The notes beneath the pieces were generated by a model. It ran no database searches. It was not told the DNA's origin and saw only the letters and a list, made by a program, of their open reading frames with translations. The position numbers and the translations under genes are program-made. From positions 150,007 to 214,006 of the IMG/VR virus record IMGVR_UViG_3300046787_000286: DNA of 64,000 nucleotides; one strand, written 5' to 3'. Shown here one piece after another: positions 12,803 to 55,972 of the stretch; position 1 is the first letter of the stretch; every line of letters starts with the position of its first letter.

Positions 12803-12831
12803 ATTATAGCAGATTAGGATTTATTGGTCAA
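12803..12831 (-). promoter_or_regulatory. sigma70 early promoter
   Basis: TTGACC-17-TATAAT. Confidence 0.85.
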
Positions 12832-13220
12832 TAGTAAGACAATGCCTCTAGCGGCTCGCCTTTAAGGATCATCCAAGTTTCTTGCTCTTCGGAAAAGACA
12901 AGATCCCGCTCTACTAAAAATTTTCGGCGGTCGTCGTCTCTCATTTTCATCCAAGCATTAACCTTTTCATAACTGCCCTTGGCTGATACGGGCATGCAGT
13001 TAAGCATCCATTTGGATAGATCTTTGAGAGATTGAACTGCGTTAGCAGGATGACTATGAATGATTGCCATAGCATCACCAGCATACCATCCTTTAAAGAA
13101 GCTACCGGGCTCAATCCCAAACACTAGGTAGTTATACATAGGATCTGCAAAGTCTTTGGCCACACGCCAATGGGCCATTGACTTCCGTAAACGGTGTTCA
13201 CTGTATGTTGATAGCTTCAT
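12828..13220 (-). CDS. hypothetical protein
   Basis: 130 aa, YLVFGIEPGSFF; GGAGG RBS. Confidence 0.7.
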   Translation of the reverse strand: MKLSTYSEHRLRKSMAHWRVAKDFADPMYNYLVFGIEPGSFFKGWYAGDAMAIIHSHPANAVQSLKDLSKWMLNCMPVSAKGSYEKVNAWMKMRDDDRRKFLVERDLVFSEEQETWMILKGEPLEALSYY

Positions 13221-13231
13221 GCTACCTCCGA

Positions 13232-13741
13232 TTAGTCGTTGAACAGTTTCACTAGTTCTTGTGCTAGGGCGTTGTTGCCCAGCACAGGGCTGAGTGCGGA
13301 ATGTTCGTCTCGGTACATGTTGTATAAACCCATTTTCTTTTCTGCTTTAGAAGCACTTGCATTCGAAAGACGGTCTGCTGACTTCACAAAGTCTGCACCC
13401 GGAGTACGAGCAATTTTTTCAATTACATTGGACATTTTTTCAGCACGGTCGCTGCCGTGTGCTGTTACAGCCCAAACCATGTCTGCTACATTAGTGCCGA
13501 ACATTTTGCGGATGTCGTCAATTGTGACTTCCGGGCTGTCTTCTACTGTGTCGTGCAACCAGGCAGCGGCAATAATTTCAGGGTCGTCGGTGATTTGCTT
13601 CACACGGCGCACCACATCTTCCAAGTGAACTGAGTATGGCTGCTCGCCATACTTTTGATCTTTGTGTGCGGCACGAGCAACAAGCTCGGCGCGATGGACT
13701 AGACTGTTACCAATAGTTGCGTTTACTTCGTTAATTTTCAT
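13232..13741 (-). CDS. HD-domain (p)ppGpp hydrolase-like protein (small alarmone hydrolase / Mesh1-type)
   Basis: AHKDQ..PYSVH, AAWLHDTVED, VKSADRLSN. Confidence 0.85.
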   Translation of the reverse strand: MKINEVNATIGNSLVHRAELVARAAHKDQKYGEQPYSVHLEDVVRRVKQITDDPEIIAAAWLHDTVEDSPEVTIDDIRKMFGTNVADMVWAVTAHGSDRAEKMSNVIEKIARTPGADFVKSADRLSNASASKAEKKMGLYNMYRDEHSALSPVLGNNALAQELVKLFND

Positions 13742-13769
13742 GGTGCCCTTTTTTTTACTCTATGTACAT

Positions 13770-13826
13770 ATTATAGCAAAAGGGCAATAATTGGTCAACC
13801 AGTAAAAAGTAGTACTCAAGTATTAC
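13770..13826 (-). promoter_or_regulatory. early promoter cassette with 18-bp palindrome
   Basis: TTGACC-17-TATAAT (13770-13798); GTAGTACTCAAGTATTAC at 13809-13826. Confidence 0.85.
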
Positions 13827-14155
13827 AGTTGATCGGGCCAGTCACGGAACAGTGCATGCTGGATATCCCCTGCTACAAACTGGTTGAACGACTTGTGTTT
13901 TGTTTCGAGCTCGCCTTCTAGTGGTGCAACACGTTTGAACGCAGAGTCCATTTGCGCCATGTCCTTGAATTCCATGAGTATCATCCATTCAGGCATGTCA
14001 GCAATCGAACGGAATCCCATTTTGCATCTTGTGATACGATAGCTTTCCATACGACCTTCGGATACCAAATGATCAAAGAATCCCTTCATGCCATTTACCC
14101 ACTCGAGGTCAGAAATGTCGCCTTGTTTATTTGCCCAAATTGTATAAATGTCCAT
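13823..14155 (-). CDS. dimeric alpha/beta-barrel-type protein (DUF6614-like)
   Basis: MDIYTIW...YRITRCKMGF...MEFKDMAQMDSAF...FRDWP; family recalled from motif. Confidence 0.6.
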   Translation of the reverse strand: MDIYTIWANKQGDISDLEWVNGMKGFFDHLVSEGRMESYRITRCKMGFRSIADMPEWMILMEFKDMAQMDSAFKRVAPLEGELETKHKSFNQFVAGDIQHALFRDWPDQL

Positions 14156-16439: not shown

Positions 16440-16640
16440 TTACTTTGCAGCCAATGCCTCTTTTTCAGCAGTGATTTCTTTGCGGCGTTCTTTAATGCCC
16501 TTGCTCATTTCTTGAAGAGCTTTGCGAGCGCGAGCTGCCGATGCCTTTACACCTTTTGCTGTAAACTTTTCGTTTTCGGCAATGTATGTTTCGTAAGCGG
16601 TAACAATTTGTTCGTGTTGTGTAGGTGTTGGTGATGTCAT
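16440..16640 (-). CDS. histone H1-like (Hc1-family) small basic protein
   Basis: ENEKF..KGVKASAARARKALQE...RRKEI; AAGGAG RBS; promoter at 16667-16694. Confidence 0.75.
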   Translation of the reverse strand: MTSPTPTQHEQIVTAYETYIAENEKFTAKGVKASAARARKALQEMSKGIKERRKEITAEKEALAAK

Positions 16641-16700
16641 AATATTCTCCTTGATAGACAAAAGTAATTATAACACTTTCCGCACACTTGTCAAATTTCT

Positions 16701-17027: not shown

Positions 17028-17372
17028 TTAGGCTTTTGCGGCCTCGAGCACTTGCTCGGCAGTAACTTCTTTCTTGGCAGGCTTGGATGCCTTGACCTTG
17101 ACTTCGCCCTTCTTAGCGAGCTTGGCTTTTTCTGCCAACTTGTTGGCAACAGCAAAACCTGCATCACCTTCGGTGATACCTTGCTCTGTTAGATACTGGA
17201 GACATTCCAGCTTGGTCATTGCATGTGGCAACTCAACCAAGTTAATATCAGTGCAACCTGCTTTGTTGAGGATCTTAATACGAGCTACCAGGTCGTTTGC
17301 AAAACGTGCCTTAACGGTGCCATCGGAGTTTTTAGCGGTACCAGCCACGGTAAAAGTTTTTTCTGCTGTCAT
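17028..17372 (-). CDS. hypothetical protein with Lys/Ala-rich tail
   Basis: FTVAG...KARFAND..RIKIL.K.G; own promoter at 17441-17469. Confidence 0.75.
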   Translation of the reverse strand: MTAEKTFTVAGTAKNSDGTVKARFANDLVARIKILNKAGCTDINLVELPHAMTKLECLQYLTEQGITEGDAGFAVANKLAEKAKLAKKGEVKVKASKPAKKEVTAEQVLEAAKA

Positions 17373-17440: not shown

Positions 17441-17469
17441 ATTATAGCAAAAGATGATATTTAGGTCAA
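17441..17469 (-). promoter_or_regulatory. sigma70 early promoter
   Basis: TTGACC-17-TATAAT. Confidence 0.85.
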
Positions 17470-17635: not shown

Positions 17636-17729
17636 TCGATTTCCTTTTGCAGTTTTGATAAGTTAATTATACCAGATTTAGGGTTTTTCGTCAACCGTTT
17701 TTGTATAGAAAAAAGTTAGTACTTAACAC

Positions 17730-19256
17730 TTACTTGTTGATCAGGTGTCGCACAGCTTCTAATTCAGGAATGTAGTCACCAAGTTGACTGTTTCTGGCTG
17801 CGTCCAATTTATCATTGAATTCAAAAAACTTACGCAACTTCTCTACATCAAAGGTAGGATTTGTTTTGTAATACTCGTACATAGAATCAATTGCGCTCTT
17901 GTTAGATTTGCCATCGCTCATGTACATATTGGTTTTCATACACCTAGACAAACTGTCTAACGCCATCTCAACATTGGGATGGATAAACGGGCTTTGATGT
18001 TCGACATAATTTATCTGTACGTACACCGAAGTGTCTGGCAATTCTCGATCTAAAAATTCATAAAGCAAATGTAAGTTCGTAACATTGTAAATTCCTGGAA
18101 CACAGTTGATAGATATACGATGCCCATGGCTTTTTAATAATTTTATATTTTTAATAATAGTATCAAAGTTACTGCCCCAACGCCAATAATCGTTCACACG
18201 CCCGTATCCGTCTAAACTTATGCTGAAATTTACTACAGAAAAGTGATTGCACAGATTTAAAAAGCGTTGACTAATTTTTTGTCCGTTTGTGCCAAACGTG
18301 AGTTCAAAATCTGTTTTGTTTGCTGCTATACATCTTTCCATGAAAGTGAGAACTTCCGGGATAACAGTTGGATCGCCACCGGTCAAGTATATCCGTGACA
18401 ATGGTGACAATGTATTGATGTCGATCCTATCAATATTGGAATATTGGTACTGCTCGGTATCATTTACCCACTTACTAAAAGTGATGTTGTGCTGTTTAAA
18501 TTCAGCTTCAATCCGATGACTGTATGCTGGACGGCAACCTCTGCACATTAGATTGCACTTGTTGCTCAGTCGCAATTCATATAGATAAGGATGAGTAATC
18601 TTGTCGAGATCCTCAAACGATTGGATGTTTAATTTATTAATCCAATCCCGAGTTTCAAATTGCCGATAGCTCTCAATACCTTTATCTTCGTATTCTTCGT
18701 AGCAAAACCCGCAGTGCTCAGGTATGCGTTCTCCTGCTAACATTTTTTGTCTAATAGCCTGATAATCAGGATTGGTCTTCCAGTCAACAATTTTATCAGG
18801 GGTTGTTACATTTGCCCTGGCTCTGGGACAAAGGCGTGTGGTGCCATTTTCCTCAGTGAAATTTATCCATGGGTAAATGCAAAAACTTTTATTCTCGGTT
18901 GTTAGTTTGTCAATTGAGTGAGCAGCTAGCACATTGGCATTGTCTTTGTATACTACATCATAGCCGCGTTGGTCAATCTCTTCCATGATCTTTATAGTAC
19001 TCAACAATGGCTTCCAATTAGTCCATTGACTAATCGGCTGATCTAATAGAACAATTTGATCAAAGTAATCAGCCAACTTGACTATAGCGCCAAACGGTAT
19101 GTCTAAAACAGTAGTATGATAAAATCCATCATGGGCAGGCACAAAGTCTGCCTGACTAATAAGACCGTGATTAATTGTGTTATGCGTTGCGGCCAACACA
19201 CTTACACGACGATCGGTATCTTCATCGTTGTTTCCTAAATATAAAACTTTGTTCAT
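17730..19256 (-). CDS. radical SAM enzyme with N-terminal twitch/SPASM-like Cys cluster
   Basis: CIYPW...C...CGFC; CNLMCRGC; GGDP; TNG; SLDG. Confidence 0.9.
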   Translation of the reverse strand: MNKVLYLGNNDEDTDRRVSVLAATHNTINHGLISQADFVPAHDGFYHTTVLDIPFGAIVKLADYFDQIVLLDQPISQWTNWKPLLSTIKIMEEIDQRGYDVVYKDNANVLAAHSIDKLTTENKSFCIYPWINFTEENGTTRLCPRARANVTTPDKIVDWKTNPDYQAIRQKMLAGERIPEHCGFCYEEYEDKGIESYRQFETRDWINKLNIQSFEDLDKITHPYLYELRLSNKCNLMCRGCRPAYSHRIEAEFKQHNITFSKWVNDTEQYQYSNIDRIDINTLSPLSRIYLTGGDPTVIPEVLTFMERCIAANKTDFELTFGTNGQKISQRFLNLCNHFSVVNFSISLDGYGRVNDYWRWGSNFDTIIKNIKLLKSHGHRISINCVPGIYNVTNLHLLYEFLDRELPDTSVYVQINYVEHQSPFIHPNVEMALDSLSRCMKTNMYMSDGKSNKSAIDSMYEYYKTNPTFDVEKLRKFFEFNDKLDAARNSQLGDYIPELEAVRHLINK

Positions 19257-20044: not shown

Positions 20045-20398
20045 TTAGACCAGCACAGAGGACATGTTGCTGGAGTAGCTAGCAATGAAATTTTCGCCAA
20101 CATCCAGGCTCACATAAGTGTCGCCTTGCATGCCTTGCTCAGAGTAGCCAACATCGCTATCGTCAAGGCCCATGGCAGTCAACAATTCTTTCAAGTCTTT
20201 TTCAAATTGACGATCTGTATAAATCAATCCGTCTTTGTTTACGTCCCAAGACTTGGTGTCAAAGTAAACACGGAGTTCGCCAAAGTCTTGCTCGTCATTA
20301 ACATACGCTAGGTTAATGCCAGTGACCTTAACGTCCTTGGCAACTTCTGACCAGTAGCCGCATCCGTTTGTGGACAAAATTGCAGTGACTTTACGCAT
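20045..20398 (-). CDS. hypothetical early protein
   Basis: GYWS...GELRVYF...IYTD..F...YSEQGMQG; AAGGAG RBS. Confidence 0.75.
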   Translation of the reverse strand: MRKVTAILSTNGCGYWSEVAKDVKVTGINLAYVNDEQDFGELRVYFDTKSWDVNKDGLIYTDRQFEKDLKELLTAMGLDDSDVGYSEQGMQGDTYVSLDVGENFIASYSSNMSSVLV

Positions 20399-20427
20399 TC
20401 GAACTCCTTTTGTTTCTGTATGTGTAT

Positions 20428-20507
20428 ATTATAGCAAATTGGGCAATTCTGGTCAACCAAAAAAATACCCTGCCAACTAGCAGGGTTTTGTAACACTTTG
20501 GGTTTAA
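20428..20507 (-). promoter_or_regulatory. palindrome-terminator-promoter cassette
   Basis: TTGACC-17-TATAAT (20428-20456), hairpin 20467-20486, degenerate palindrome 20490-20507. Confidence 0.85.
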
Positions 20508-20875
20508 TCTGTAAACTGCTGATTTTGCAGTTGTTGCCCTAGACTCTTTTGGGTTTTGATGTTGGCGTTGTTGCCTGTGCCCGAGTCCTTGTGACTAAAA
20601 ATACCATACAAATTAAACACAGTTGGATCTCTACCGCTGAGTGTGTAAAACACCGAAAGGTCTTGTGTTAGGTGAGCATGCTTGATACCGGGCACAGCTC
20701 TACCTAATGGGCCAGCTGATACCATTTGAGTATCACTTTTGCCAAACTGCTGGATTGGATTGTTAGTTTTAGTACCAACAAAATCTGCAAACTTTGCAGC
20801 CAGTCCCGGAACTGCCTGAGTCTTTTCAGCATAAGTTTTTTTAAACAACGGGCTCATCATGAACCGAACACTCAC
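20504..20875 (-). CDS. RelE/YafQ-like ribosome-dependent ribonuclease homolog
   Basis: S..FKK.Y N-terminus; HAHLTQDLSVFY...LYGIFSH; GTG start overlaps the upstream stop. Confidence 0.65.
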   Translation of the reverse strand: MSVRFMMSPLFKKTYAEKTQAVPGLAAKFADFVGTKTNNPIQQFGKSDTQMVSAGPLGRAVPGIKHAHLTQDLSVFYTLSGRDPTVFNLYGIFSHKDSGTGNNANIKTQKSLGQQLQNQQFTD

Positions 20876-21045
20876 TTTAGACTCTCCAGTAATTGTTCGC
20901 CTGTCATGGGCTCGCTCCATTCATTGGCTTGATGGGTGCGAACTACCTTAACTAAATCTTCAGTTAGGTAGCCGGTGTTGTTTTCAGCATCAATGCTTTC
21001 AAACAATGCTCGATCAGATGGTTGTTGGACTTCGTTAATACGCAT
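20872..21045 (-). CDS. 57-aa acidic protein, candidate antitoxin (not in ORF track)
   Basis: MRINEVQQPSDRALFESID...WSEPMTGEQLLESLK; TAAATA 4 nt upstream; GTGA overlap with the RelE-like gene. Confidence 0.6.
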   Translation of the reverse strand: MRINEVQQPSDRALFESIDAENNTGYLTEDLVKVVRTHQANEWSEPMTGEQLLESLK

Positions 21046-21048
21046 CAG

Positions 21049-21450
21049 TTATTTACTCTTTTTGGCTGCTTTGTTTTCTGCGTCTGAGGACTTTAGCACA
21101 CGCATCATTTCTGCTTGCTCAATTTCCTTTTTAACTTTGGCTTGGTATGCACGAACTTTAACTTCGCACTTTTCACGCTTGTTCTTGTCGGACACTTTGA
21201 TCAAGAAGTCGTAGTCACGTGCCCACTTTACACCAGCCAGCCATTGCTGGAGCTCTGTAATAGAACCGTTGAACAACATAGCATCTCGTGCGTAGGCAGG
21301 CAGTTCTTCGTCCTGGGGGAACACAGCTACAGTATCGCCGAATTTGCCGTCGCCCCAGCTGCCATGCTTGTCGTAGCCCCAACGCATGCCCAAGTCATGC
21401 AGTTGCTTTTCCAAGGCTTGGATTTTGAGAATTAGTGCATATCCGCTCAC
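21049..21450 (-). CDS. hypothetical protein
   Basis: 133-aa coupled ORF. Confidence 0.7.
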   Translation of the reverse strand: MSGYALILKIQALEKQLHDLGMRWGYDKHGSWGDGKFGDTVAVFPQDEELPAYARDAMLFNGSITELQQWLAGVKWARDYDFLIKVSDKNKREKCEVKVRAYQAKVKKEIEQAEMMRVLKSSDAENKAAKKSK

Positions 21451-21674
21451 GACAACAAATCTTTCATAATATTGATCCCCTCTGGTGGCAAGTTAACCAG
21501 GAGATACATCATTTGCGATTCTTCAACAACCACTTCTTCGTCGGGCCCGTTGGGATTAGATGCAATCTTTTCGTTGATAAACTTTGCCTGTACACTTTCT
21601 TCACCAAAGAAGATGTTGCACAGTTTCAAGTAACTGCCCAGGGTAGAGGGCTGACCGGTGCTGAGAGTAATCAT
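21447..21674 (-). CDS. hypothetical protein
   Basis: 75-aa coupled ORF. Confidence 0.65.
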   Translation of the reverse strand: MITLSTGQPSTLGSYLKLCNIFFGEESVQAKFINEKIASNPNGPDEEVVVEESQMMYLLVNLPPEGINIMKDLLS

Positions 21675-21982
21675 AATGTTTCCTTGTATTCAGGGTGAGA
21701 GGATTTGGCTTTTTCTGCACGCCAAGATTCTTGTTGTTCTTCATATTCACGAGTGGTACGAGCAATCGTTAGTTCCACCCAGAGCCATGTGCCAGATGCA
21801 ACGATAAGCATCACTGCCAGGCTCTGCAAGAAAAAGTGAGCCATAAGGTACACTACTGTGCCTAACACAGCAAGACCTACTACCGTTGCGGTTGCTACTT
21901 TGACTGCCATGATTGCAAAAAATACAATACCGTGCCCAATTTCTTTGAGTGCAAGTTTCAAATCCTGTTTGGTAAATGTCAT
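21671..21982 (-). CDS. membrane protein
   Basis: Two long hydrophobic segments; ATGA-coupled start at 21982. Confidence 0.65.
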   Translation of the reverse strand: MTFTKQDLKLALKEIGHGIVFFAIMAVKVATATVVGLAVLGTVVYLMAHFFLQSLAVMLIVASGTWLWVELTIARTTREYEEQQESWRAEKAKSSHPEYKETL

Positions 21983-23318: not shown

Positions 23319-23328
23319 GTTTTTCTCC

Positions 23329-23532: not shown

Positions 23533-23554
23533 TTCAAACTCCTTTTGTTTCTTT

Positions 23555-23596
23555 ATGTGTATATTATAGCAAATCGGGCAATTTTGGTCAACCAAA
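23555..23596. repeat. 42-bp exact repeat containing a sigma70 promoter (copy 1)
   Basis: ATGTGTATATTATAGCAAATCGGGCAATTTTGGTCAACCAAA, identical at 23823-23864 and 52111-52152. Confidence 0.95.
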
Positions 23597-23824
23597 TGCT
23601 TTAACTAATCCTGTGAGTCCAAGTCCCAAGGCCACAAGATTCACTGCCATTTGTGGTTTATTTGCAACACGAACAGTCCATGTCAGGAACAATATTGTGC
23701 CTACAAAAAATGCAAGAATATTGTAAGGATAGGCTGCAGGTCCCACAGCGTTGAGACTGTGCCCTGCTATGATAAACACAGCACCGGCCCACTGTAAAAT
23801 TTCGTTTGTATCTAATTTCTTCAT
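23588..23824 (-). CDS. 3-TM small membrane protein (predicted leaderless), bounded by direct repeats
   Basis: ATG lies in repeat copy 2; TGA lies in the -35 box of copy 1. Confidence 0.75.
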   Translation of the reverse strand: MKKLDTNEILQWAGAVFIIAGHSLNAVGPAAYPYNILAFFVGTILFLTWTVRVANKPQMAVNLVALGLGLTGLVKAFG

Positions 23825-23911
23825 GTGTATATTATAGCAAATCGGGCAATTTTGGTCAACCAAAAAAATACCCCGCATTTCTGCAGGGTTAATGTAACAC
23901 TTGAGTATTAC
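23823..23911 (-). promoter_or_regulatory. palindrome-terminator-promoter cassette (contains repeat copy 2)
   Basis: TTGACC-17-TATAAT, hairpin 23870-23889, GTAACACTTGAGTATTAC at 23894-23911. Confidence 0.9.
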
Positions 23912-24117
23912 TTTTTAAACTCGTGTTCCACGTAGTACTTGACTAGGCTTTGCTGGCACATAGTAATCAAGTCACCGTGGGAGTCCGGCACAATGAAACG
24001 ATATGGGCATCGTCCCCAAGTGCCATGTTTTGTAAATTGCGAATACCAACGTCGATGTTCTTTGTTGGCAGGATCAAATACTGTCCAGGGACGGGCTTTG
24101 AAATGCAATACGCTCAT
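23908..24117 (-). CDS. hypothetical protein
   Basis: FDPANKEHR...WGRCPYRF; AAGGAG RBS. Confidence 0.7.
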   Translation of the reverse strand: MSVLHFKARPWTVFDPANKEHRRWYSQFTKHGTWGRCPYRFIVPDSHGDLITMCQQSLVKYYVEHEFKK

Positions 24118-26226: not shown

Positions 26227-26284
26227 ATTATATAGCAAATACCCTATGCTGTCAACCTCTAAATGTGTAGTACTATCGTATTAC
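26227..26284 (-). promoter_or_regulatory. early promoter with palindrome
   Basis: TTGACA-17-TATAAT; GTAGTACTATCGTATTAC at 26267-26284. Confidence 0.85.
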
Positions 26285-27017: not shown

Positions 27018-27068
27018 TGCTACACTCCTTAGAACATAGCCATATTATAGCAAATGATTAATTAATGG

Positions 27069-27308
27069 TCAACCGCCCCATTTTAGCAGAAAAGCACAGT
27101 AATCACGCTCGTTGTCGAAGTAAAATAGGTAGCGACCATCTGCGTGATCCGAACTAACTTGTATCAATTGCCAACGCCATTCGCCTTGCATTTCTGATTC
27201 CTTGCACCAGGCGATCACTGAGTCCAGGCCGCCAAATGGTTGATGGATTTCGACTGCATGTTTAAAACTATCTTTTGCTCTTACAACTAGGTTGTCTAAA
27301 ACATTCAT
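27069..27308 (-). CDS. dispersed member of the F-x-L-[RK]-W small-protein family
   Basis: VIAWC...W.W...FYFDNERDYCAFLLKW. Confidence 0.8.
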   Translation of the reverse strand: MNVLDNLVVRAKDSFKHAVEIHQPFGGLDSVIAWCKESEMQGEWRWQLIQVSSDHADGRYLFYFDNERDYCAFLLKWGG

Positions 27309-31903: not shown

Positions 31904-32288
31904 GATTGTCTTTCAGTTGTTGTCGCAGTACTGCTAATGCAGCCTCGTCGCCGGAATTAAAAAATGCGTTGAGTCCCGGGAAACGTTGTTGAAACTGATC
32001 AGTAAGTTCTTTTACATCTGATCCTTGACAAACAAATTGGTTTGTATTGCTATTATAGCAGTAATACAAATTGTTTTCAACCTCTACGGTTAGTGGGATA
32101 ATCTTGTCCGAAGCAAGTGCTTGTTCTTTGGACACCGAAGTTGTGGTTTTTCCAGACTCATCTGCTAATGCTTCTTCTAGCAACACTCGAAGACGCTCTG
32201 CCCACCGGCGAACAAAGATCGCCATGACCCAAACAGCAACGACCATTCCAACTACAAATGCCAAAAACAATTCGCCCCATCCAAACAT
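31869..32288 (-). CDS. membrane-anchored hypothetical protein
   Basis: N-terminal TM; FVCQG. Confidence 0.65.
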   Translation of the reverse strand: MFGWGELFLAFVVGMVVAVWVMAIFVRRWAERLRVLLEEALADESGKTTTSVSKEQALASDKIIPLTVEVENNLYYCYNSNTNQFVCQGSDVKELTDQFQQRFPGLNAFFNSGDEAALAVLRQQLKDNRENSNSIGSAS

Positions 32289-33061: not shown

Positions 33062-33131
33062 ATTATACAGGGTTTTTATTTGCTGGTCAAGAGAAACCCG
33101 CCACTTGGGCGGGTTAATACTTTGGGTTGAC
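33062..33131 (-). promoter_or_regulatory. palindrome-terminator-promoter cassette
   Basis: TTGACC-17-TATAAT (33062-33090), hairpin 33095-33115, degenerate palindrome 33114-33131. Confidence 0.8.
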
Positions 33132-38774: not shown

Positions 38775-38775
38775 G

Positions 38776-42515: not shown

Positions 42516-42544
42516 ATTATAGCAAATCGGTAATTTTTGGTCAA
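42516..42544 (-). promoter_or_regulatory. sigma70 early promoter driving the operon that contains the array
   Basis: TTGACC-17-TATAAT, close variant of the 42-bp repeat. Confidence 0.85.
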
Positions 42545-42818: not shown

Positions 42819-42876
42819 ATTATAGCAAAACGGAAAATTCTGGTCAACCAAGCAAAATGTAATACTTTTGTAATAC
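42819..42876 (-). promoter_or_regulatory. early promoter with palindrome
   Basis: TTGACC-17-TATAAT; GTAATACTTTTGTAATAC at 42859-42876. Confidence 0.85.
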
Positions 42877-48572: not shown

Positions 48573-49135
48573 GTTAGGTCTGAAATGTAATTGCAGATTC
48601 TCAATTGAACTGCTTCTTCTGCACTAAGGTAAACATCTTGTGGAGGAAGCAGTTTTTCTTTTATAGTTTTTTCGTCTAGTCCAGTTGCCAACTTGTAATG
48701 TGCTAGCATGCGTTCGTGAACTAAATTAAACTCTTTTGTAACTGCCCATAGTTCGTGGTGCTTGCCTTCGCTTCCCCAGGAGTACTGGTGGCTTAGTATA
48801 CTGGTATTTGGTGTTAATATGCGGGGCTTGCCTGCTAAGAATATCATCAATCCTGCTGATGCAATTTGCCCTAGTCCCACAGTTTTAACAGGAATCAAGC
48901 TGCTTCGTATTACATCGATTAGTGCAAATGCAGATTCGAGCTCCCCGCCTGAGCTGCAAATCATTAACAGTAATTCTTTTTTCTTCTTTTTAACCACATG
49001 ATTCTCTGCCAGAATCCACTCTATAATAGGCTGTATTGACTCTTCGTCAACTTCGCCCATGAAGACATACATCCCGTTGTCTTGCAGTTGTTCCGAATGT
49101 GATCTTGATTCTGGTAGGTCTTTTTCTTGTGGCAT
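48563..49135 (-). CDS. clpP: ClpP protease subunit
   Basis: ICSSGG, GQIASAG (Ser), SHQ (His), DVYLSAEEA (Asp). Confidence 0.92.
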   Translation of the reverse strand: MPQEKDLPESRSHSEQLQDNGMYVFMGEVDEESIQPIIEWILAENHVVKKKKKELLLMICSSGGELESAFALIDVIRSSLIPVKTVGLGQIASAGLMIFLAGKPRILTPNTSILSHQYSWGSEGKHHELWAVTKEFNLVHERMLAHYKLATGLDEKTIKEKLLPPQDVYLSAEEAVQLRICNYISDLTQR

Positions 49136-50885: not shown

Positions 50886-50914
50886 ATTATAGCAAAATGG
50901 AAATTATTGGTCAA
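50886..50914 (-). promoter_or_regulatory. sigma70 early promoter
   Basis: TTGACC-17-TATAAT. Confidence 0.85.
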
Positions 50915-51101
50915 CCGATTCCACATCCTGCAAGATACGCTTGAGTTCGTCGATGTTGACTTCCAACATCTTGACAACAGCATAGGCCATCATACGCACA
51001 TGGGCATCTTCTGATTTACGATTCTCGTTTTCACGAGCCAAGTATGCTTCCTTGCCGGCGATTGTGTTACGCAGATTTTCTGCTACGGTTTGGATGTTCA
51101 T
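50904..51101 (-). CDS. hypothetical protein
   Basis: 65 aa, ATGA-coupled. Confidence 0.65.
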   Translation of the reverse strand: MNIQTVAENLRNTIAGKEAYLARENENRKSEDAHVRMMAYAVVKMLEVNIDELKRILQDVESVDQ

Positions 51102-51307
51102 TTCAATTCCTTTACAACCCAAGGTTCAGGTTTAACTTTCCAATGATCCTTGTTCCAGATACCATGAACATTTTCTTCCCACAATCCAATGATTGCGTTC
51201 ATGTTAACGGCATGTGCTTCTGCATCCTCTTTGGTGTAAAACTTCATAGGAACTGGACTTGGATCATTGGGACTCATTGCCCCGTGTGTGAATTTTGGTT
51301 CGTTCAT
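51098..51307 (-). CDS. hypothetical protein
   Basis: 69 aa, ATGA-coupled. Confidence 0.6.
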   Translation of the reverse strand: MNEPKFTHGAMSPNDPSPVPMKFYTKEDAEAHAVNMNAIIGLWEENVHGIWNKDHWKVKPEPWVVKELK

Positions 51308-51483
51308 TTTGATTCTTTCAATCGTTTTACATTCAAGAAAATTCGTTGTTCATGCAAGCCAACAGCGGCCTGTCGCAGTTCTCTCAATCTTGCTTCGCTT
51401 TGATTTTCTTTGGATTTATTGTGTTCTACGATAAACTGATCCTTGACTAATTGTAGCAAGATTTCAGTTGCTTCCCAGTTCAT
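51304..51483 (-). CDS. 59-aa hypothetical protein (not in ORF track)
   Basis: ATGA overlaps at both ends. Confidence 0.55.
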   Translation of the reverse strand: MNWEATEILLQLVKDQFIVEHNKSKENQSEARLRELRQAAVGLHEQRIFLNVKRLKESK

Positions 51484-51698
51484 TTTTCAACTCCAAACTG
51501 TTTCAACATATCATACGCATTGTCATCATCGACAACAAGACTGGCACATTCTCGCACAATCAACTCAGCGAACAAGTCAAGGTCAAAGTGACGGGTCACT
51601 GATACTGACTTGATAGTAGGATCAACCACAGAACTAAAATATTCTTGTCGGCGTTCTATATGAGCCTGCTCATACAGTTTTTTAATTCGTAGGTTCAT
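51480..51698 (-). CDS. FAELIV.EC/FGVE family protein
   Basis: LFAELIVREC...KQFGVEK. Confidence 0.75.
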   Translation of the reverse strand: MNLRIKKLYEQAHIERRQEYFSSVVDPTIKSVSVTRHFDLDLFAELIVRECASLVVDDDNAYDMLKQFGVEK

Positions 51699-51922
51699 TC
51701 TTCAACTCCGAAATCTTTGTTAATAGCACGGATGTAATCTTCCGATGTTGGTACTTGCCCTTTTTCTTCCATTACCACATCTGTAATTAGAATACTTGCA
51801 ATTACCTTACGGTGCATATCTTGCATAATCAACTCAGAGAACTTTCGCTTGTCAAGATACCGAAAACCATCGTGCTCTTCGGTAGTGGCTTGTTCGGCTA
51901 GTTGTTTAATCGGTTCGTTCAT
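51695..51922 (-). CDS. FAELIV.EC/FGVEE family protein
   Basis: MNEPIKQLAEQA...KFSELI...FGVEE. Confidence 0.75.
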   Translation of the reverse strand: MNEPIKQLAEQATTEEHDGFRYLDKRKFSELIMQDMHRKVIASILITDVVMEEKGQVPTSEDYIRAINKDFGVEE

Positions 51923-52089
51923 ACCATCTCTACCTTGCCGTTGAGTTGTTGTGCAACTTTGTCAGCTTGGGCACGGCTACGGTATGTTTGGGGCTGACGC
52001 ACGAAAGAAATCTTACCACTGCGGTCGTATTCGTTACGGCCAATTGCAAATTTCTCGTCGCTTTGATCCAGGGCAATCACATAAAACAT
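51919..52089 (-). CDS. 56-aa early protein (not in ORF track)
   Basis: AAGGA RBS after promoter; ATGA overlap. Confidence 0.55.
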   Translation of the reverse strand: MFYVIALDQSDEKFAIGRNEYDRSGKISFVRQPQTYRSRAQADKVAQQLNGKVEMV

Positions 52090-52110
52090 ACTCGGTCCTT
52101 TTTGCTGTCT

Positions 52111-52197
52111 ATGTGTATATTATAGCAAATCGGGCAATTTTGGTCAACCAAAAGAAAAGCCCCTTGCGGGGCTCAAAATGTACTACTTGAGTATTAC
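52111..52197 (-). promoter_or_regulatory. palindrome-terminator-promoter cassette (contains repeat copy 3)
   Basis: 42-bp repeat 52111-52152, hairpin 52158-52173, GTACTACTTGAGTATTAC at 52180-52197. Confidence 0.9.
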
Positions 52198-52460
52198 TTT
52201 TTGAAGCTGAACTTTTCTGCCATGTCAGCGTATGCTTTGTTGAAGTCATACTTGGTAGCTTCTTGAGCTGTCTTTACTGCTTCGCTTGTGAGTGAAGTGA
52301 AAGTGTCCATGCCAACCTTAGCTGCCTTCTTTGTGTAGTCGGCTTGTGCATCAATGAACTTGATCAATGGTGCTTTGACTGCTTCGTTTGTTACGAATGT
52401 GTTGATGAAAGTCTTTTTTGCAGTTTGAACTGCGTCGATGGTTGCGTCTGCTGTAAACAT
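52194..52460 (-). CDS. phasin-like amphipathic helical protein
   Basis: Ala/Thr/Lys-rich helices, IDAVQTAKK..FV, FIDAQ..YTK. Confidence 0.5.
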   Translation of the reverse strand: MFTADATIDAVQTAKKTFINTFVTNEAVKAPLIKFIDAQADYTKKAAKVGMDTFTSLTSEAVKTAQEATKYDFNKAYADMAEKFSFKK

Positions 52461-52516: not shown

Positions 52517-52567
52517 TAGTATATTATATATGATCTATATATTGAAGATCAATGGGTTTTTGTATGT

Positions 52568-53743
52568 TTAGTGACGACTCACTAAATCTGCAACCTTTTT
52601 ACCTGTAGCCGGGCCTAGTGTCCATCCCAAATGTCCGTGTCCTGTGTTGTAAAACACATTTGGGGTAGATACACTTTGGCGAATAATTGGCATCATGTCT
52701 GGTGTCATTGGACGCAAACATGCATACTGAGTGTAATCATGTGTGTTAATGTTTGGGAAATTAGTATGCACCCATTTCAACAACGGGTCGATTCGATCTC
52801 TAGTGATGTCGTAGTTTTCACCTGCCAGCTCTGCTGTGCCTGCAACACGGAAACGATTGCCTAATGTTGCTGTAACAATTTTTGCTTCGTCATCTAATAA
52901 ACTCACTCGAGGCAAATACTTAGGATCGACATTGTTGATTGTGATAGAGTAACCCTTGACTGGGTATACATCAATTGTGTCTCCCGCTGTCTTGGCCAAT
53001 GCTCGACTGCCAACTCCGTTTGCAATCACAATAGCATCGTAAAAGGAAAGTTCTTCCACATGTCCAATTTTCCAGTTGTAGTGAAATTCAACTCCGTACT
53101 TGGTCTCTAAGATTTCTGCAAGGCTATAACAGAACTTGTGAATGTCTCCTGTCCAATCTTCCTTGGTCCATGTGCCACCGATAATATTCTCAATATCACC
53201 TAGTGCAGGATCCATTGACTTTACATGTTGACTGCTTTGTAGCAAATCCCAACTGCATCCGTTGGCATTATAAAGTTCTTTAATATCTTGTGCATTTTTC
53301 CAATAGTCGGGATTCTTGTAAAAATGCAAGATGCCGCAATCGTTACGATCAAAATCGATATTCTCATCGCTACAAATCTCATCGTATAGCTGTCTGCTTT
53401 GAATACCCATCTGAACAGTCGAACTAGAGTTGCGATAACAAACATCGTTGACTGTTGCTAACAAAAATTTAAACACCCAACGCCACATTGCCCAGTCTAG
53501 TCTCCAACGAAACTTTAACGGAGCGTCTTTCTTGAACATCCATTTGAAGCCTTTCTTGACATTGCTCCATGTTGTCCATGTTTCTGAATTACTAACTGAT
53601 ATTTGTCCACCGTTGGCAAAACTTGTTTTCATGCCAGCATAACGTTCAGCTTCGTATACTCTAACTTTGTGACCGGACTTTGCCAGATAATACGCTGAAC
53701 ATAGTCCCGTAATGCCTGCGCCTACTACTGCTACTTTTTTCAC
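52568..53743 (-). CDS. dadA: D-amino acid dehydrogenase (FAD-dependent)
   Basis: GAGITG, TSFANGGQIS, YPVKGYS, RVAGTAE, LRPMTPD, NTGHGHLGWT. Confidence 0.93.
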   Translation of the reverse strand: MKKVAVVGAGITGLCSAYYLAKSGHKVRVYEAERYAGMKTSFANGGQISVSNSETWTTWSNVKKGFKWMFKKDAPLKFRWRLDWAMWRWVFKFLLATVNDVCYRNSSSTVQMGIQSRQLYDEICSDENIDFDRNDCGILHFYKNPDYWKNAQDIKELYNANGCSWDLLQSSQHVKSMDPALGDIENIIGGTWTKEDWTGDIHKFCYSLAEILETKYGVEFHYNWKIGHVEELSFYDAIVIANGVGSRALAKTAGDTIDVYPVKGYSITINNVDPKYLPRVSLLDDEAKIVTATLGNRFRVAGTAELAGENYDITRDRIDPLLKWVHTNFPNINTHDYTQYACLRPMTPDMMPIIRQSVSTPNVFYNTGHGHLGWTLGPATGKKVADLVSRH

Positions 53744-53815
53744 TGTTAATTCCTTAAGACAAACTATTTATAAGGTACCATTAACCACCTACTAAATAAA
53801 ATCGGAGGATATCAC

Positions 53816-54085
53816 ATGATACGATTTTTTAAAAACTTATTCAAAGGCAAGGAACCTATTCCTGCGCCCGAAGCACCTTACAAGGTAGAAACGCCAGTTA
53901 CTAAAGTTGCCGCAGTAAATGCACAACCTGTTGTTGCCGAGGTAGTAACTGCCAAGGCTGTTACCAAGGCACCTGCTAAGAAACGCACGTTTGTTAAACG
54001 TGAAGAAGGTGGCGTTGCCAAAGTAGCACCTGTCAAAGCAAAGCCCAAGGCACCTGCAAAACCCAAGGCACCTAAAGCAAAATAA
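53816..54085 (+). CDS. Lys/Ala/Pro-rich low-complexity protein
   Basis: TAAATA and GGAGG upstream; APYKVETP, KAPAKPK repeats. Confidence 0.7.
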   Translation: MIRFFKNLFKGKEPIPAPEAPYKVETPVTKVAAVNAQPVVAEVVTAKAVTKAPAKKRTFVKREEGGVAKVAPVKAKPKAPAKPKAPKAK

Positions 54086-54107
54086 AAAGCCCCGAAAGGG
54101 GCTTTTT
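54084..54107. terminator. bidirectional intrinsic terminator
   Basis: AAAAAGCCCC-GAAA-GGGGCTTTTT between convergent genes. Confidence 0.9.
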
Positions 54108-54409
54108 TATTGAAATATCATTCTGGCTAGTGCTACACTATCTATGCTGACTAACAAGAAGTAGTTGGCTAACATACCTAGACTCTTTCGTGTCCATGCC
54201 GCCCATGCAAAGATAACGCATTGTGTAATGAACAATGGGTATAGGATCAAGAAAGGCGGATTAGGAACAGTTAGCATCATAGTAAATGAGCATCCGATAC
54301 TCAAGAACCATGCCAAGATTTCTAATCCACAACGTAGAGGATTACTGCGCCAGTCCTCCCGTATCCATGCAACAATATTAAGCAGTAAATTGTTCATACA
54401 GTTGTTCAC
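54107..54409 (-). CDS. 3-TM membrane protein
   Basis: Hydrophobic segments, PPFL.LYP. Confidence 0.7.
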   Translation of the reverse strand: MNNCMNNLLLNIVAWIREDWRSNPLRCGLEILAWFLSIGCSFTMMLTVPNPPFLILYPLFITQCVIFAWAAWTRKSLGMLANYFLLVSIDSVALARMIFQ

Positions 54410-55400
54410 TTGCTAGATTCTTGCTCTTGGCCTCGCACTGAATATCAAAGTTGTCAGCAAAGCCTAACACCCAGTCATTACAAGCTGTATTCCACATCAT
54501 ATCAGAGTGTGCGCGGAGCTTTTGCTTTTTAAAACCTCCAGCAAGAAGTTGATCAAGGTCTGGTCGAACTCCTGTATCATGACCAACCAAAACATCTTCG
54601 CGGCTAACAGAGTAGTGAAGAGTAGGACGCTGGTCGCGCCAAGACTCAATAACCCGCATCGTGCGAGCGTCCTTGGGATCGATGTACTCGCCGGAATTAA
54701 TCCAATGGTGGTGAACGTCCAGAACAAGAGCAACATGCTCAGCCACAAGTAAAGTACTATCAAGTCCATTTGTCATCTCGTCGTTTTCGATGGAAATTAA
54801 GTTCCTGGCCTCTGGAGTGAGACGACCTAGTGTCTTCAGGAATTTAGTGGCACCACCTTTGCCACTCAAATGCACGTTTATTTTAAATCCATGATCATGC
54901 CAACTTGAACCGTAACCCATCCAGCGAGCCATGTCCGCGTGATACTCAAATTCGAGTATCGAACGTTCCACGATGTCGTCGGACTCACTAGCCAGTACAC
55001 AGAATTGCCCAGGGTGAAACGACAATCGAACACCAAGTTCTCGAGCACGAGCACCAATCGGAGCAAAGATTCGGGCACAGTGATCTTGAACATCTTGCTG
55101 TTGCCAAAACGGAATCCAATCTTCATGTGTGTATCCTTGTAGCATTTCTGAGCCCAGGCGCACCATGCGGCGGCCTTCGGGCATGGCACCCACACGTTCC
55201 ACCATAAGCAGAGCCGCACGAGCATTGTGATTCATAATGTCCCACTGACGCTGTTCTGCTTCGCTCTTGTGTTCGCGAAGCCAGCGCATTGTAGTAGAAC
55301 GCCCGTTTAGTTCACGGCTCTCAACTGTGGGCTTGCGACCCGCAGTTTCAGAGGGATGATCGAGCCATTTGCAGCAAAAGCCAATTCGAGGTGTATTCAT
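54378..55400 (-). CDS. uvsE: UV-damage endonuclease (predicted leaderless)
   Basis: RIGFCC, RLSFHPGQF, INVH, IENDE, LDVHHH, HYS, HSD, EAKSK; TTGACA-17-TATAAT at 55407-55435. Confidence 0.93.
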   Translation of the reverse strand: MNTPRIGFCCKWLDHPSETAGRKPTVESRELNGRSTTMRWLREHKSEAEQRQWDIMNHNARAALLMVERVGAMPEGRRMVRLGSEMLQGYTHEDWIPFWQQQDVQDHCARIFAPIGARARELGVRLSFHPGQFCVLASESDDIVERSILEFEYHADMARWMGYGSSWHDHGFKINVHLSGKGGATKFLKTLGRLTPEARNLISIENDEMTNGLDSTLLVAEHVALVLDVHHHWINSGEYIDPKDARTMRVIESWRDQRPTLHYSVSREDVLVGHDTGVRPDLDQLLAGGFKKQKLRAHSDMMWNTACNDWVLGFADNFDIQCEAKSKNLASEQLYEQFTA

Positions 55401-55417
55401 GATGTAATTATACAACA

Positions 55418-55972
55418 TTACGAAAATTGTGTCAACACGTTATCTAACTTGTCAAACAACAAATTTGGTAAATCTTTGAACATTTTTTCAATTTGATCTG
55501 GGTGGTCCAAAATAACCCATTGGATTGTAGGGTTATCTTTTACAAGATGTAATACATATTGCTTATAATTGTGCCACTTATGGATAGCCAATTTATCTGT
55601 GCCAAGATCCTTGGGCTGCAAATCAAACCCAACTAACAATACAATATCGCTATTAGAAGTTGACAAGTGCATACTCACAATATCATCTGGATGGTCTACT
55701 ATTTCGTGAAAGTCACCTTGATATAACTTAACACCCGGTGGCCTACCAATTGACTGATATGCAGAATTAGGCACATACAAATTGCATCTTGTATGGAAAC
55801 TTCTATTAACTAAATCCTGTGCCTCTGGCTCGGAGTGACATATGACATTGTCAGTTGCGTAACTGCGCCAGGTGCGCCAGCCACCCCAAAATGGACCAAC
55901 GCTTTTGAGTCGTTCTATATCTATAGTTGGATGTATAGTTGCAGCATCGGCTAGTACCCAGGATATTTTCAT
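55418..55972 (-). CDS. Maf/DUF115-like or sialyltransferase-fold protein (degenerate)
   Basis: G..WG.....S..TDNVIC ... IVLLVGFDL pattern. Confidence 0.45.
   Translation of the reverse strand: MKISWVLADAATIHPTIDIERLKSVGPFWGGWRTWRSYATDNVICHSEPEAQDLVNRSFHTRCNLYVPNSAYQSIGRPPGVKLYQGDFHEIVDHPDDIVSMHLSTSNSDIVLLVGFDLQPKDLGTDKLAIHKWHNYKQYVLHLVKDNPTIQWVILDHPDQIEKMFKDLPNLLFDKLDNVLTQFS

What the first reader, a model, noticed from the sequence alone, without database searches (positions are those of the whole stretch)
12803..55435. Near-identical promoter cassettes, including a 42-bp exact triplicate, delimit gene modules
Seen: about 16 minus-strand TTGAC(C/A/G)-17-TATAAT promoters (one with a 16-nt spacer). 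The 42-mer at 23555, 23823 and 52111 is identical, spacer included, and 20402-20461 versus 23537-23596 differ at 3 of 60 nt. Spacer identity exceeds what sigma70 needs. Established: promoter/stem-loop cassettes (PeSL elements) have been proposed to mediate modular shuffling in T4-type phages. Inference: these repeats are recombination hubs for accessory early genes.
Basis: partly seen in the sequence, partly recalled or inferred. Interest (0 to 1): 0.6.

Follow-up and report, generated by a model that had tools for sequence, protein, structure and literature searches.

The report
Early promoter cassettes of a jumbo phage
The repeats are the strong, host-type early promoters, with their leader sequences, of an uncultivated freshwater jumbo phage; they are kept alike mainly by selection and only occasionally serve as recombination points, as known T4-type 'PeSL' cassettes do.

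Summary
The window holds 15 perfect TTGAC-N18-TATAAT sites plus one with a 16-nt spacer, all on the minus strand (0.03 expected). The 42-mer is an exact triplicate, and the 60-mers differ at 3 positions.

The window is the end of a 214-kb IMG/VR contig of a ~345-kb freshwater jumbo phage. Its nearest cultured kin are PA5oct-like phages. The whole contig has 30 such sites and 0 on the other strand. Four near-complete relatives have 35-40 each, again on one strand.

The unit is larger than a promoter: GG, -35, a spacer with a family-wide consensus and an extended -10 TG, -10, a conserved leader, Shine-Dalgarno and ATG. About half of the copies also carry an upstream hairpin.

The spacer consensus is shared by genomes whose proteins are about 55% identical, so selection explains most of the similarity.

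Recombination among copies is also visible:
- one hybrid-cassette indel
- neighbouring cassettes are more alike than distant ones
- each lineage has its own upstream hairpin
- a 268-bp unit consisting of a cassette core and one gene

Cassettes are not the main indel sites. In a 91%-identical genome pair, 3 of 52 gaps touch one (null 6.7). In deep comparisons, synteny breaks are 2-4 times commoner at cassettes.

Verdict: a PeSL-like system in a new phage clade. The 'hub' reading is partly supported.

The parts
12803..12831 (-). Cassette core (-35 to -10), TTGACC, 17-nt spacer. An ATG 6 nt after the -10 (12796) opens ORF 12572-12796, so this is a leaderless-type start.
13770..13798 (-). Cassette core. 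The AT-rich hairpin GTAATAC-N4-GTACTAC (13809-13826) and a T-run lie just upstream. It drives the HD-domain gene 13232-13741.
16667..16694 (-). Cassette core with a 16-nt spacer (TTGACA). It lies upstream of 16440-16661. Gene adjacency across it is conserved in relatives.
17441..17469 (-). Cassette core upstream of 17028-17372.
17666..17694 (-). Cassette core (TTGACG) with Shine-Dalgarno and ATG about 30 nt downstream.
20402..20486 (-). Full composite cassette: GC hairpin plus T-run (20467-20486), core 20428-20456, and leader with Shine-Dalgarno down to the ATG of 20045-20398. It is a mosaic: the upstream part resembles the 23859 copy and the leader resembles the 23591 copy (20/24).
23555..23596 (-). 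Exact 42-mer, copy 1 (core 23563-23591). Its -35 contains the TGA stop of the 78-aa gene. Its leader and Shine-Dalgarno drive 23329-23532 and the genes downstream.
23588..23824 (-). 78-aa membrane protein gene (DUF6552). It starts 6 nt after the -10 of the upstream cassette and ends inside the -35 of the next one. Gene plus one core make a 268-bp repeat unit.
23823..23919 (-). Exact 42-mer, copy 2 (core 23831-23859), with a GC hairpin plus T-run (23870-23889) and an AT hairpin (23894-23911) upstream.
26227..26255 (-). Cassette core (TTGACA, no TG). An AT hairpin lies at 26267-26284 upstream. It drives the ParB-like gene 25104-26150.
27044..27072 (-). Cassette core upstream of 26793-27017.
32052..32080 (-). 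One-mismatch copy (TTGAAA ... TGCTATAAT).
33062..33115 (-). Cassette core 33062-33090 with an upstream GC hairpin (33095-33115). It drives 32577-33041.
42516..42544 (-). Cassette core. Its upstream edge (42545) is the left boundary of a 2.6-kb segment that is replaced by 390 bp in relative G006.
42819..42847 (-). Cassette core with a leaderless-type ATG at 42812.
50886..50914 (-). Cassette core. Homology with G006 ends at 50920, its upstream edge.
50921..52095 (-). Body of one transcription unit (six small ORFs), bounded by cassettes on both sides. G006 has 481 unrelated bp here, carrying an extra cassette.
52111..52205 (-). Exact 42-mer, copy 3 (core 52119-52147), with a GC hairpin (52159-52172) and an AT hairpin (52180-52197) upstream. 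The stretch 52177-52205 is 90% identical to 23891-23919.
55407..55435 (-). Cassette core (TTGACA) inside the junction of 55418-55972 and 54378-55418, with an in-frame ATG 6 nt after the -10 (55400).

Best explanation
The repeats are the early promoter-leader cassettes of an uncultivated freshwater jumbo myovirus of about 345 kb, distantly related to Pseudomonas phage PA5oct.

Each cassette is a near-consensus promoter for the host sigma70 RNA polymerase. It consists of GG, TTGACC, a 17-nt spacer ending in an extended -10 TG, and TATAAT. This is followed either by a conserved leader with a GGAG Shine-Dalgarno or, in about one copy in five, directly by the start codon (a leaderless-type start). 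About half of the copies are preceded by a hairpin plus T-run that would stop read-through from the unit upstream.

The cassettes head co-oriented transcription units of mostly small accessory genes.

Shown:
- The cassette consensus, spacer and leader included, is shared across the phage family.
- Orthologous spacers change more slowly than their flanks.
- Copies exchange sequence or are duplicated within a genome. Neighbouring copies are more alike, upstream hairpins are lineage-specific, the window has an exact triplicate, and one indel carries a hybrid cassette.

Inferred:
- Transcription is early and uses the host polymerase.
- The 42-69-nt homology lets the phage's recombination system occasionally delete, insert or swap the unit between two cassettes, as proposed for T4-type PeSLs.
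- This is a secondary and minor route of gene gain and loss. It is not the main one.
For: Strand-exclusive excess:
- 15 sites in the window against 0.03 expected.
- 30 on the minus strand and 0 on the plus strand of the 214-kb contig.
- 35-40 on one strand only in each of four 340-345-kb relatives.

Anatomy:
- The aligned copies show GG, -35, spacer, TG, -10, leader, Shine-Dalgarno and ATG.
- The top-scoring terminator-like hairpins lie directly upstream of cassettes 20456 and 23859.

Kin:
- PA5oct is 53% identical in the clamp loader.
- PA5oct depends on the host RNA polymerase and has 32 promoters with TTGAC and TATAATA motifs at mapped transcript starts (PMC7318152).

Selection:
- The same spacer and leader consensus is found in five genomes with a median protein identity of about 55%.
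- Orthologous spacers of G001 and G002 are 93.5% identical, against about 88% for the flanks.

Exchange:
- Pairs of cassettes less than 600 bp apart are 0.56 identical, against 0.40 for distant pairs (permutation p < 0.0002).
- G000 has 9 near-identical pairs, against 0-3 in the other genomes.
- The hairpin GTAATAC-N4-GTRYTAC has 6 copies in G000 and none in G001/G002. G001 has its own upstream motif.
- A hybrid cassette sits at a 409-bp indel.
- The cassette at 20456 is a mosaic.
- The unit of cassette, 78-aa gene and cassette is conserved in at least 15 relatives, in at least 6 different upstream contexts.

Synteny:
- Adjacency is broken at 31 of 59 cassette junctions, against 172 of 628 others (odds ratio 2.9).
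- With local controls the odds ratio is 2.2-3.0.
Against: - No transcript starts, timing or promoter activity were measured for this phage.
- Only 4 of 16 window cassettes have a GC hairpin plus T-run. Terminator-like sites as a whole are not enriched over shuffles.
- Mean within-genome similarity of cassettes is not above between-genome similarity (0.436 against about 0.41, p = 0.18).
- In the close pair G001/G002, gap boundaries are not enriched at cassettes (3 of 52, null 6.7).
- The synteny counts reuse junctions across genome pairs and rest on crude ORF calls, so their p-values are optimistic.
- All genomes are metagenome assemblies.
Confidence: 0.7

Rival explanations
1. Strong form of the first reader's idea: the cassettes are the principal recombination hubs, and exchange between them accounts for most gain, loss and shuffling of accessory early genes, as claimed for PeSLs in RB49/phi1.
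For: - Three of 8 indel boundaries against G006 lie at cassette edges, and one replaced unit is bounded by cassettes on both sides.
- A hybrid cassette sits at one indel.
- Synteny breaks are enriched at cassettes.
- The 78-aa gene sits between two cassettes in many different contexts.
Against: - Only 3 of 52 gaps between G001 and G002 touch a cassette, fewer than the 6.7 expected for random junctions.
- 172 of 203 deep adjacency breaks lie at junctions without a cassette.
- Other indels are flanked by other short repeats, namely ends of paralogous genes and tRNA T-arms.
- Any cassette aligns with any other, so homology that ends at a cassette edge is partly a by-product of promoter conservation.
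Confidence: 0.15
2. Pure functional constraint: the copies are alike only because one promoter-leader sequence is optimal. Recombination between copies plays no part.
For: - The consensus, spacer and leader included, is shared by five divergent genomes.
- A G000 variant recurs at 37 of 38 positions in G003.
- Orthologous spacers are more conserved than their flanks.
- There is no global excess of within-genome similarity.
Against: - Orthologous spacers still diverge. The upstream cassettes of the 78-aa gene differ at a mean of 7 of 18 positions between lineages, so an exact 42-nt triplicate is not expected from constraint alone.
- Similarity falls with distance between copies.
- The upstream hairpins have lineage-specific sequences although any hairpin would terminate.
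- A hybrid cassette sits at one indel.
- PA5oct promoters work with unrelated spacers.
Confidence: 0.12
3. The spacer and the bases around the -35 are conserved because they are an operator for a phage-encoded regulator (for example an early shut-off repressor), not because of sigma70 or recombination. This can coexist with the best explanation.
For: - Spacer conservation is specific to this clade and absent from PA5oct.
- GG before the -35 co-occurs with C after TTGAC, giving the dyad GGT-TG-ACC, which extends to TTGGT-TG-ACCAA in the main G000 subfamily (52/15 against 27/42, p = 6e-6).
Against: - The co-occurrence can equally reflect descent of a subfamily.
- The outer dyad positions do not covary (p = 0.42).
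- No candidate regulator was identified.
- Part of the spacer signal is simply the extended -10 TG.
Confidence: 0.2
4. Assembly artefact: identical cores and apparent rearrangements arise because metagenome assemblers collapse or mis-join repeats shared by co-occurring related phages.
For: - Contig depth rises 8-10-fold at the cassettes in the source-like run.
- The k = 31 unitigs break exactly there.
Against: - Logan's independent contigs of run X1 reproduce the window with no differences right up to the cassettes (table 8).
- A 42-nt repeat is shorter than the usual final k-mer and than a read.
- G001 and G002, from different samples, are collinear across 30 shared cassettes.
- G006 is collinear with the window across four cassettes.
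Confidence: 0.03

Closest known systems
PeSL (promoter-early stem-loop) cassettes of T4-type phages RB49/phi1, T4/PST and KVP40/nt-1 (Arbiol et al. 2010, PMC2839356; Comeau et al. 2014, PMC4122927)
   Same: - Both are composite intergenic elements: stem-loop, T-rich stretch, near-consensus sigma70 promoter with a 17-nt spacer, Shine-Dalgarno and ATG.
- Both occur as dozens of co-oriented copies concentrated among small variable genes.
- The stem-loop consensus is lineage-specific in both.
- Single genes can be flanked by two copies.
- Some indels have a crossover inside the element.
   Different: - The host phage is not a T4-like. It is a ~345-kb freshwater jumbo phage whose nearest cultured kin is PA5oct.
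- Only about half of the copies carry a hairpin.
- The spacer and a roughly 25-nt leader are themselves conserved across the family.
- About one copy in five is leaderless-type, and about one in five overlaps the stop codon of the upstream gene.
- In the one close genome pair available, indels are not enriched at the elements.
- Mini-circles, promoter activity and terminator activity are untested.
Promoters of Pseudomonas phage PA5oct (Lood et al. 2020, PMC7318152)
   Same: PA5oct is the nearest cultured relative. It depends on the host RNA polymerase and has about 32 promoters with TTGAC and TATAATA boxes at transcript starts. A copy number of about 30-40 per genome on one strand matches.
   Different: PA5oct spacers are unrelated to one another. 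No role in recombination has been described for them.
T4 early promoters (my own knowledge of the T4 literature; not checked here)
   Same: They are strong promoters for the unmodified host sigma70 polymerase, with conserved positions beyond the two hexamers, including an extended -10 TG. They head clusters of small nonessential early genes.
   Different: The T4 -35 is GTTTAC-like, and A-rich UP elements are prominent. Here the -35 is TTGACC, with GG upstream.
Morons of lambdoid phages (promoter-gene-terminator units; my own knowledge)
   Same: They are self-contained transcription units inserted between other genes. The 268-bp unit of cassette core and 78-aa gene is of that kind.
   Different: Morons do not share a common repeated promoter sequence that could serve as homology.

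Membership tests
PeSL cassettes (T4-type phages) | Near-consensus sigma70-like promoter, -35 and -10 separated by 17 nt | tested here: met
   There are 15 copies with a 17-nt spacer and 1 with a 16-nt spacer in the window, and 30 in the contig, all on one strand.
PeSL cassettes (T4-type phages) | Stable stem-loop (terminator/attenuator) directly upstream of the promoter | tested here: inconclusive
   Four of 16 window copies have a GC hairpin plus T-run (20456, 23859, 33090, 52147). About 4 more have the AT-rich hairpin GTAATAC-N4-GTRYTAC. Eight have none, and their -35 lies in or at the end of the upstream ORF.
PeSL cassettes (T4-type phages) | Shine-Dalgarno and start codon of the downstream gene at the 3' end of the element | tested here: met
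   Most copies have GGAG/AGGA and an ATG 20-40 nt after the -10. About 18% instead have the ATG 6 nt after the -10.
PeSL cassettes (T4-type phages) | Concentration in hyperplastic regions rich in small genes without known homologues | tested here: met
   Cassettes cluster, for example 19 in 30 kb of G001. More than half of the window ORFs have no homologue in four relatives. Pfam finds few domains.
PeSL cassettes (T4-type phages) | Indels and replacements between closely related genomes bounded by the elements, with crossovers inside them | tested here: inconclusive
   One clean hybrid-cassette indel was found. Three of 8 boundaries against G006 lie at cassette edges. However, only 3 of 52 gaps in G001/G002 touch a cassette, against a null of 6.7. 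Deep synteny breaks are enriched with an odds ratio of 2-4.
PeSL cassettes (T4-type phages) | Formation of mini-circles by recombination between flanking elements | not testable with these tools
   The runs that hold the phage are kept only as contigs. The joints seen (20465 to 23885 and others) are ambiguous because a cassette fits two places.
PeSL cassettes (T4-type phages) | Measured promoter and terminator activity | not testable with these tools
   This needs reporter assays. No RNA run holds the stretch.
PA5oct-type host-polymerase promoters | TTGAC and TATAATA boxes upstream of transcript starts, in a phage that lacks its own RNA polymerase dependence | tested here: inconclusive
   The motifs are identical, with an A following TATAAT in the consensus (PMC7318152). 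Transcript starts and polymerase dependence are not testable here.

The most novel reading that the evidence does not exclude
The cassette core may be a self-propagating regulatory module, not just a passive patch of homology. Units such as the 268-bp 'core plus 78-aa gene' form a complete promoter-ORF unit only when circular: the ORF starts at the transcript start and stops inside the -35. Such units would excise and reintegrate at other cores, within a genome and between co-infecting jumbo phages. The clade-specific conserved spacer, or the dyad around the -35, would then serve as the recognition site of a dedicated phage protein.
Probability: 0.1. Interest if true: 0.75.

Novelty: new member of a known kind. 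Interest (0 to 1): 0.4.

Why it matters
PeSL-type cassettes have so far been described only in T4-like phages. They are one of the few concrete proposed mechanisms for how large lytic phages swap accessory genes without wrecking neighbouring expression.

Finding the same architecture in an abundant, uncultivated freshwater jumbo-phage clade shows that the design is not peculiar to T4-likes. This clade has a well-defined consensus and hundreds of related contigs available. It therefore offers a large natural data set on which the recombination claim can be tested against a proper null, which the original papers did not do.

The first such test here is sobering: cassettes mark some exchange points but not most of them.

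The cassette consensus is also a practical marker. It can be used to annotate early transcription units in this clade, including leaderless ones.

Tried and rejected
- A near-identity DNA search of the phage collection found nothing. Cultured relatives are reachable only at the protein level.
- No close relative of the window's own genome was found. The best is G006 at 70-87% identity, covering 41.5-64 kb only. Eighty loci found with one window protein reach 53-73% amino-acid identity at most. The nucleotide-level indel test therefore had to be run on the family pair G001/G002.
- Read evidence for excision products was sought, but the runs are kept only as contigs. Joints between 20.46 kb and 23.88 kb have sides of about 30 nt that fit two cassettes, so I do not count them.
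- Global concerted evolution, meaning higher similarity within than between genomes, is not significant (p = 0.18).
- The same-genome versus cross-genome comparison of the two cassettes flanking the 78-aa gene is only marginal (p = 0.053).
- A T4 MotA-box reading of the enriched TGCTTAA motif was rejected. The motif shows no strand bias, and in G001 it is part of a lineage-specific upstream motif or hairpin.
- A general excess of intrinsic terminators was not found (27 against 18.2 +/- 4.8, and 17 against 18.5).
- A position weight matrix trained on perfect copies added almost no further sites. A one-mismatch scan adds about 12 per contig, with 2 on the wrong strand.
- The costly protein searches, structure prediction and complex prediction were not used, because no claim depended on them.

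Full report
**Observation**

A pattern search finds 15 exact TTGAC-N18-TATAAT sites in the window. Shuffles give 0.03. A sixteenth site with a 16-nt spacer lies at 16667-16694. The 42-mers at 23555, 23823 and 52111 are identical, and identity stops within 0-1 nt on either side. The stretches 20402-20461 and 23537-23596 differ at 3 of 60 positions. An independent consensus scanner ranks these same sites as the only 11-12/12 matches.

**Where the window comes from**

The window is the last 64 kb of a 214,006-bp IMG/VR virus contig, rated 62% complete, which implies a genome of about 345 kb.
- There is no near DNA match among deposited phages.
- The clamp-loader protein (1225-2148) is 53% identical to that of the Pseudomonas jumbo phage PA5oct and its kin, and about 40% identical to other giant myoviruses.
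- The runs that hold the stretch are freshwater and lake metagenomes.
- The cassette-bearing region encodes many small ORFs without recognisable domains. It also encodes accessory enzymes: an HD-domain protein, a cell-wall hydrolase, two radical SAM proteins, a D-Ala-D-Ala carboxypeptidase, a metallophosphatase and ClpP.

**Anatomy of the repeat**

In the whole contig there are 30 perfect sites on the minus strand and none on the plus strand. Allowing one mismatch gives 41 on the minus strand against 2 on the plus strand.

Aligned on the -10, the copies share more than the hexamers:
- GG before the -35, and C after TTGAC
- a spacer consensus that is A/T-rich, then GC-rich, then TTTGC; its TG is an extended -10
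- A after TATAAT
- ATACACAT and a purine-rich leader ending in GGAG, then the ATG

In eight copies of the contig this conserved stretch reaches 60-69 nt (family D1).

About half of the window copies have a hairpin upstream:
- Four have a GC-rich stem plus T-run (20456, 23859, 33090, 52147). Two of these are the best terminator-like sites of the region.
- About four have an AT-rich hairpin, GTAATAC-N4-GTRYTAC, followed by a T-run.
- In the others the -35 lies in or at the end of the preceding ORF.

The units headed by the cassettes run from one cassette to the next cassette or hairpin. They contain one to about twenty genes.

**Relatives**

A degenerate 37-mer of the cassette hits 50 loci of many IMG/VR contigs, among them four genomes of 340-345 kb that are 95-99% complete. 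I fetched these four (G001-G004) and the 32-kb contig G006.
- Each large genome has 35-40 perfect sites, always on one strand only.
- G000 shares only 40-45% of its ORFs with them, at a median of about 55% protein identity.
- G001 and G002 are 91% identical over 304 kb.

**Why the copies are so alike: selection**

The consensus, spacer and leader included, is the same in all five genomes. One G000 variant recurs at 37 of 38 non-hexamer positions in G003. Between orthologous cassettes of G001 and G002 the spacer is 93.5% identical and the first 14 transcribed bases 93.3%, against about 88% for the flanks. PA5oct has the same boxes, but its spacers are unrelated. The spacer is therefore under purifying selection in this clade for a reason beyond bare sigma70 recognition. 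Part of that reason is the extended -10 TG. A dyad around the -35 (GGT-TG-ACC) shows co-occurrence of its arms, but that can also come from subfamily descent.

**Why the copies are so alike: exchange**

Constraint alone does not give an exact 42-nt triplicate. The orthologous cassettes upstream of one conserved gene differ at a mean of 7 of 18 spacer positions between lineages. Several results point to duplication or conversion among copies:
- Pairs less than 600 bp apart are 0.56 identical at 38 non-hexamer positions, against 0.40-0.44 for all others (permutation p < 0.0002).
- G000 has 9 near-identical pairs, against 0-3 in the other genomes.
- The upstream hairpin has a lineage-specific sequence. 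G000 has six copies and G001/G002 have none, while G001 has a different upstream motif. Any hairpin would terminate, so this specificity is not explained by function.
- The cassette at 20456 combines an upstream part like that of 23859 with a leader like that of 23591 (20/24).

Against a strong homogenization, mean within-genome similarity is not significantly above between-genome similarity (p = 0.18).

**A telling unit**

The two identical cores at 23563 and 23831 lie 268 bp apart and flank one gene, a 78-aa DUF6552 membrane protein. Its ATG lies 6 nt after the -10 of the upstream core, and its TGA stop is the TGA inside the -35 of the downstream core. Gene plus one core is thus exactly one repeat period. 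As a circle it would be a complete promoter-ORF unit.

The same geometry is found in at least 15 relatives. There the two cores differ at 2-10 spacer positions, and the upstream neighbours fall into at least six unrelated contexts. This is what the PeSL mini-circle model would produce (PMC2839356). It does not prove that model.

**Do gain and loss boundaries coincide with cassettes?**

Three tests gave different answers.

1. Window against G006, over 22 kb at 70-87% identity. There are four indels or replacements.
   - The segment 50921-52095 is bounded by cassettes on both sides.
   - The segment 42545-45111 is bounded by a cassette on one side.
   - The segments 52534-53767 and 59975-61251 are bounded on neither side.
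   - In total, 3 of 8 boundaries lie at cassettes, against about 1 expected. This is not significant.
2. G001 against G002.
   - There are 52 gaps of 150 bp or more, and 3 have a boundary within 62 nt of a cassette.
   - Random gene junctions give 6.7 +/- 2.4.
   - Within 3 kb of a cassette the figure is 3 of 28, where 15% of junctions carry one.
   - One of these gaps is a clean case: a 409-bp unit flanked by two cassettes in G002 and a single hybrid cassette in G001.
   - Other indels are flanked by other short repeats, namely ends of paralogous genes and tRNA T-arms.
3. Deep comparisons among G000, G001, G003 and G004. These used adjacent sense-strand genes that both have reciprocal best hits.
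   - Adjacency is lost at 31 of 59 junctions with a cassette, against 172 of 628 without (odds ratio 2.9).
   - With intergenic gaps of 40 nt or more as control, the figure is 23 of 85 (odds ratio 3.0).
   - Per unique junction and within 1.5-2.5 kb of a cassette, the odds ratio is 2.2-3.0 (p = 0.08-0.009).
   - These counts are not independent and rest on simple ORF calls.
   - The enrichment can also arise from selection against breaking operons, without any crossover in the cassette.

**Reads**

One 5.9-kb stretch was laid on four runs, within the operators' limit of 6,000 letters.
- Only contigs are kept for these runs. Contigs of run X1 reproduce the window without a difference up to the cassettes.
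- Unitigs break at the cassettes, and depth there rises 8-10-fold. This fits a repeat shared by many related phages.
- Joints between cassette regions are ambiguous and are not counted.

**Comparison with what is known**

The architecture and setting match the PeSL elements of T4-type phages (PMC2839356, PMC4122927). The promoter class matches that of PA5oct (PMC7318152). The differences are:
- the phage clade
- the partial presence of the stem-loop
- the family-wide conserved spacer and leader
- the leaderless-type copies and those that overlap a stop codon
- the lack of enrichment of recent indels at the cassettes

I file it as a new member of a known kind. It works like a PeSL in part. Membership by the recombination criterion is inconclusive, and the mini-circle criterion is untested.

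**Verdict**

The repeats are real, and they are almost certainly strong early promoters. Their similarity is due mainly to selection, plus occasional exchange among copies. They mark some module boundaries and some recombination events, but not most. Interest is moderate.

Noticed in passing
window 12796, 23824, 42812, 55400; genome-wide in G000, G001, G003, G004: In 25 of 136 perfect cassettes an ATG lies 5-8 nt after TATAAT (exactly 6 nt in 22 of them) and opens an ORF of 40 codons or more. This suggests that about one early unit in five starts with a leaderless mRNA.
   Followed up: partly
window 23588-23591 and 28 other cassettes in four genomes: The TGA inside the -35 hexamer TTGAC serves as the stop codon of the upstream ORF in 29 of 136 cassettes. 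For the 78-aa gene this overlap is conserved in at least 15 relatives.
   Followed up: partly
window 13809-13826, 23894-23911, 26267-26284, 52180-52197: An AT-rich hairpin with a fixed stem sequence, GTAATAC-N4-GT(A/G)(C/T)TAC, followed by a T-run lies just upstream of cassettes. G000 has six sense copies and G001/G002 have none, while G001 has its own motif, CTGCTTAAAAA...GCAG. It could be a terminator, an RNA processing site or a protein-binding site; I could not tell which.
   Followed up: partly
window 37537-41632, minus strand: A tandem array of about 20 small overlapping ORFs (60-160 aa) is joined by a repeated stop/Shine-Dalgarno/start junction (TGAGGTGGTCATGA). None has a homologue in G001-G004 (families D4/D5).
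   Followed up: no
window 22391-22624, 41879-42085, 51480-51698, 51695-51922: A family of small proteins of about 70-77 aa ends in (F)GVEE. One member matches DUF7736. Copies are scattered over three cassette-led units, and their conserved ends are extremely deep in lake metagenome contigs.
   Followed up: partly
window 7134-10007, minus strand: A 957-aa protein has a central part resembling S8 (subtilisin-type) peptidases of the giant phages Phosso and Atu_ph07 at 28-29% identity. It has no PHROG match.
   Followed up: no
window 17730-19256 and 43823-45094, minus strand: Two radical SAM proteins (508 and 423 aa) sit in cassette-led units. The second lies in the 2.6-kb segment that is absent from relative G006.
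   Followed up: no
G001 129517-130090 / G002 49019-49045; G001 56222-56272; G001 160482-161787: Several indels between G001 and G002 are flanked by short direct repeats that are not cassettes: conserved tRNA T-arm sequence and ends of paralogous genes. Short-homology recombination therefore seems to be general in this clade.
   Followed up: partly
all cassettes; window examples 20456-20460, 23591-23595: GG before the -35 co-occurs with C after TTGAC (p = 6e-6), giving the dyad GGT-TG-ACC, which extends to TTGGT-TG-ACCAA in the main G000 subfamily. This is either a possible operator overlapping the -35 or simply subfamily descent.
   Followed up: partly
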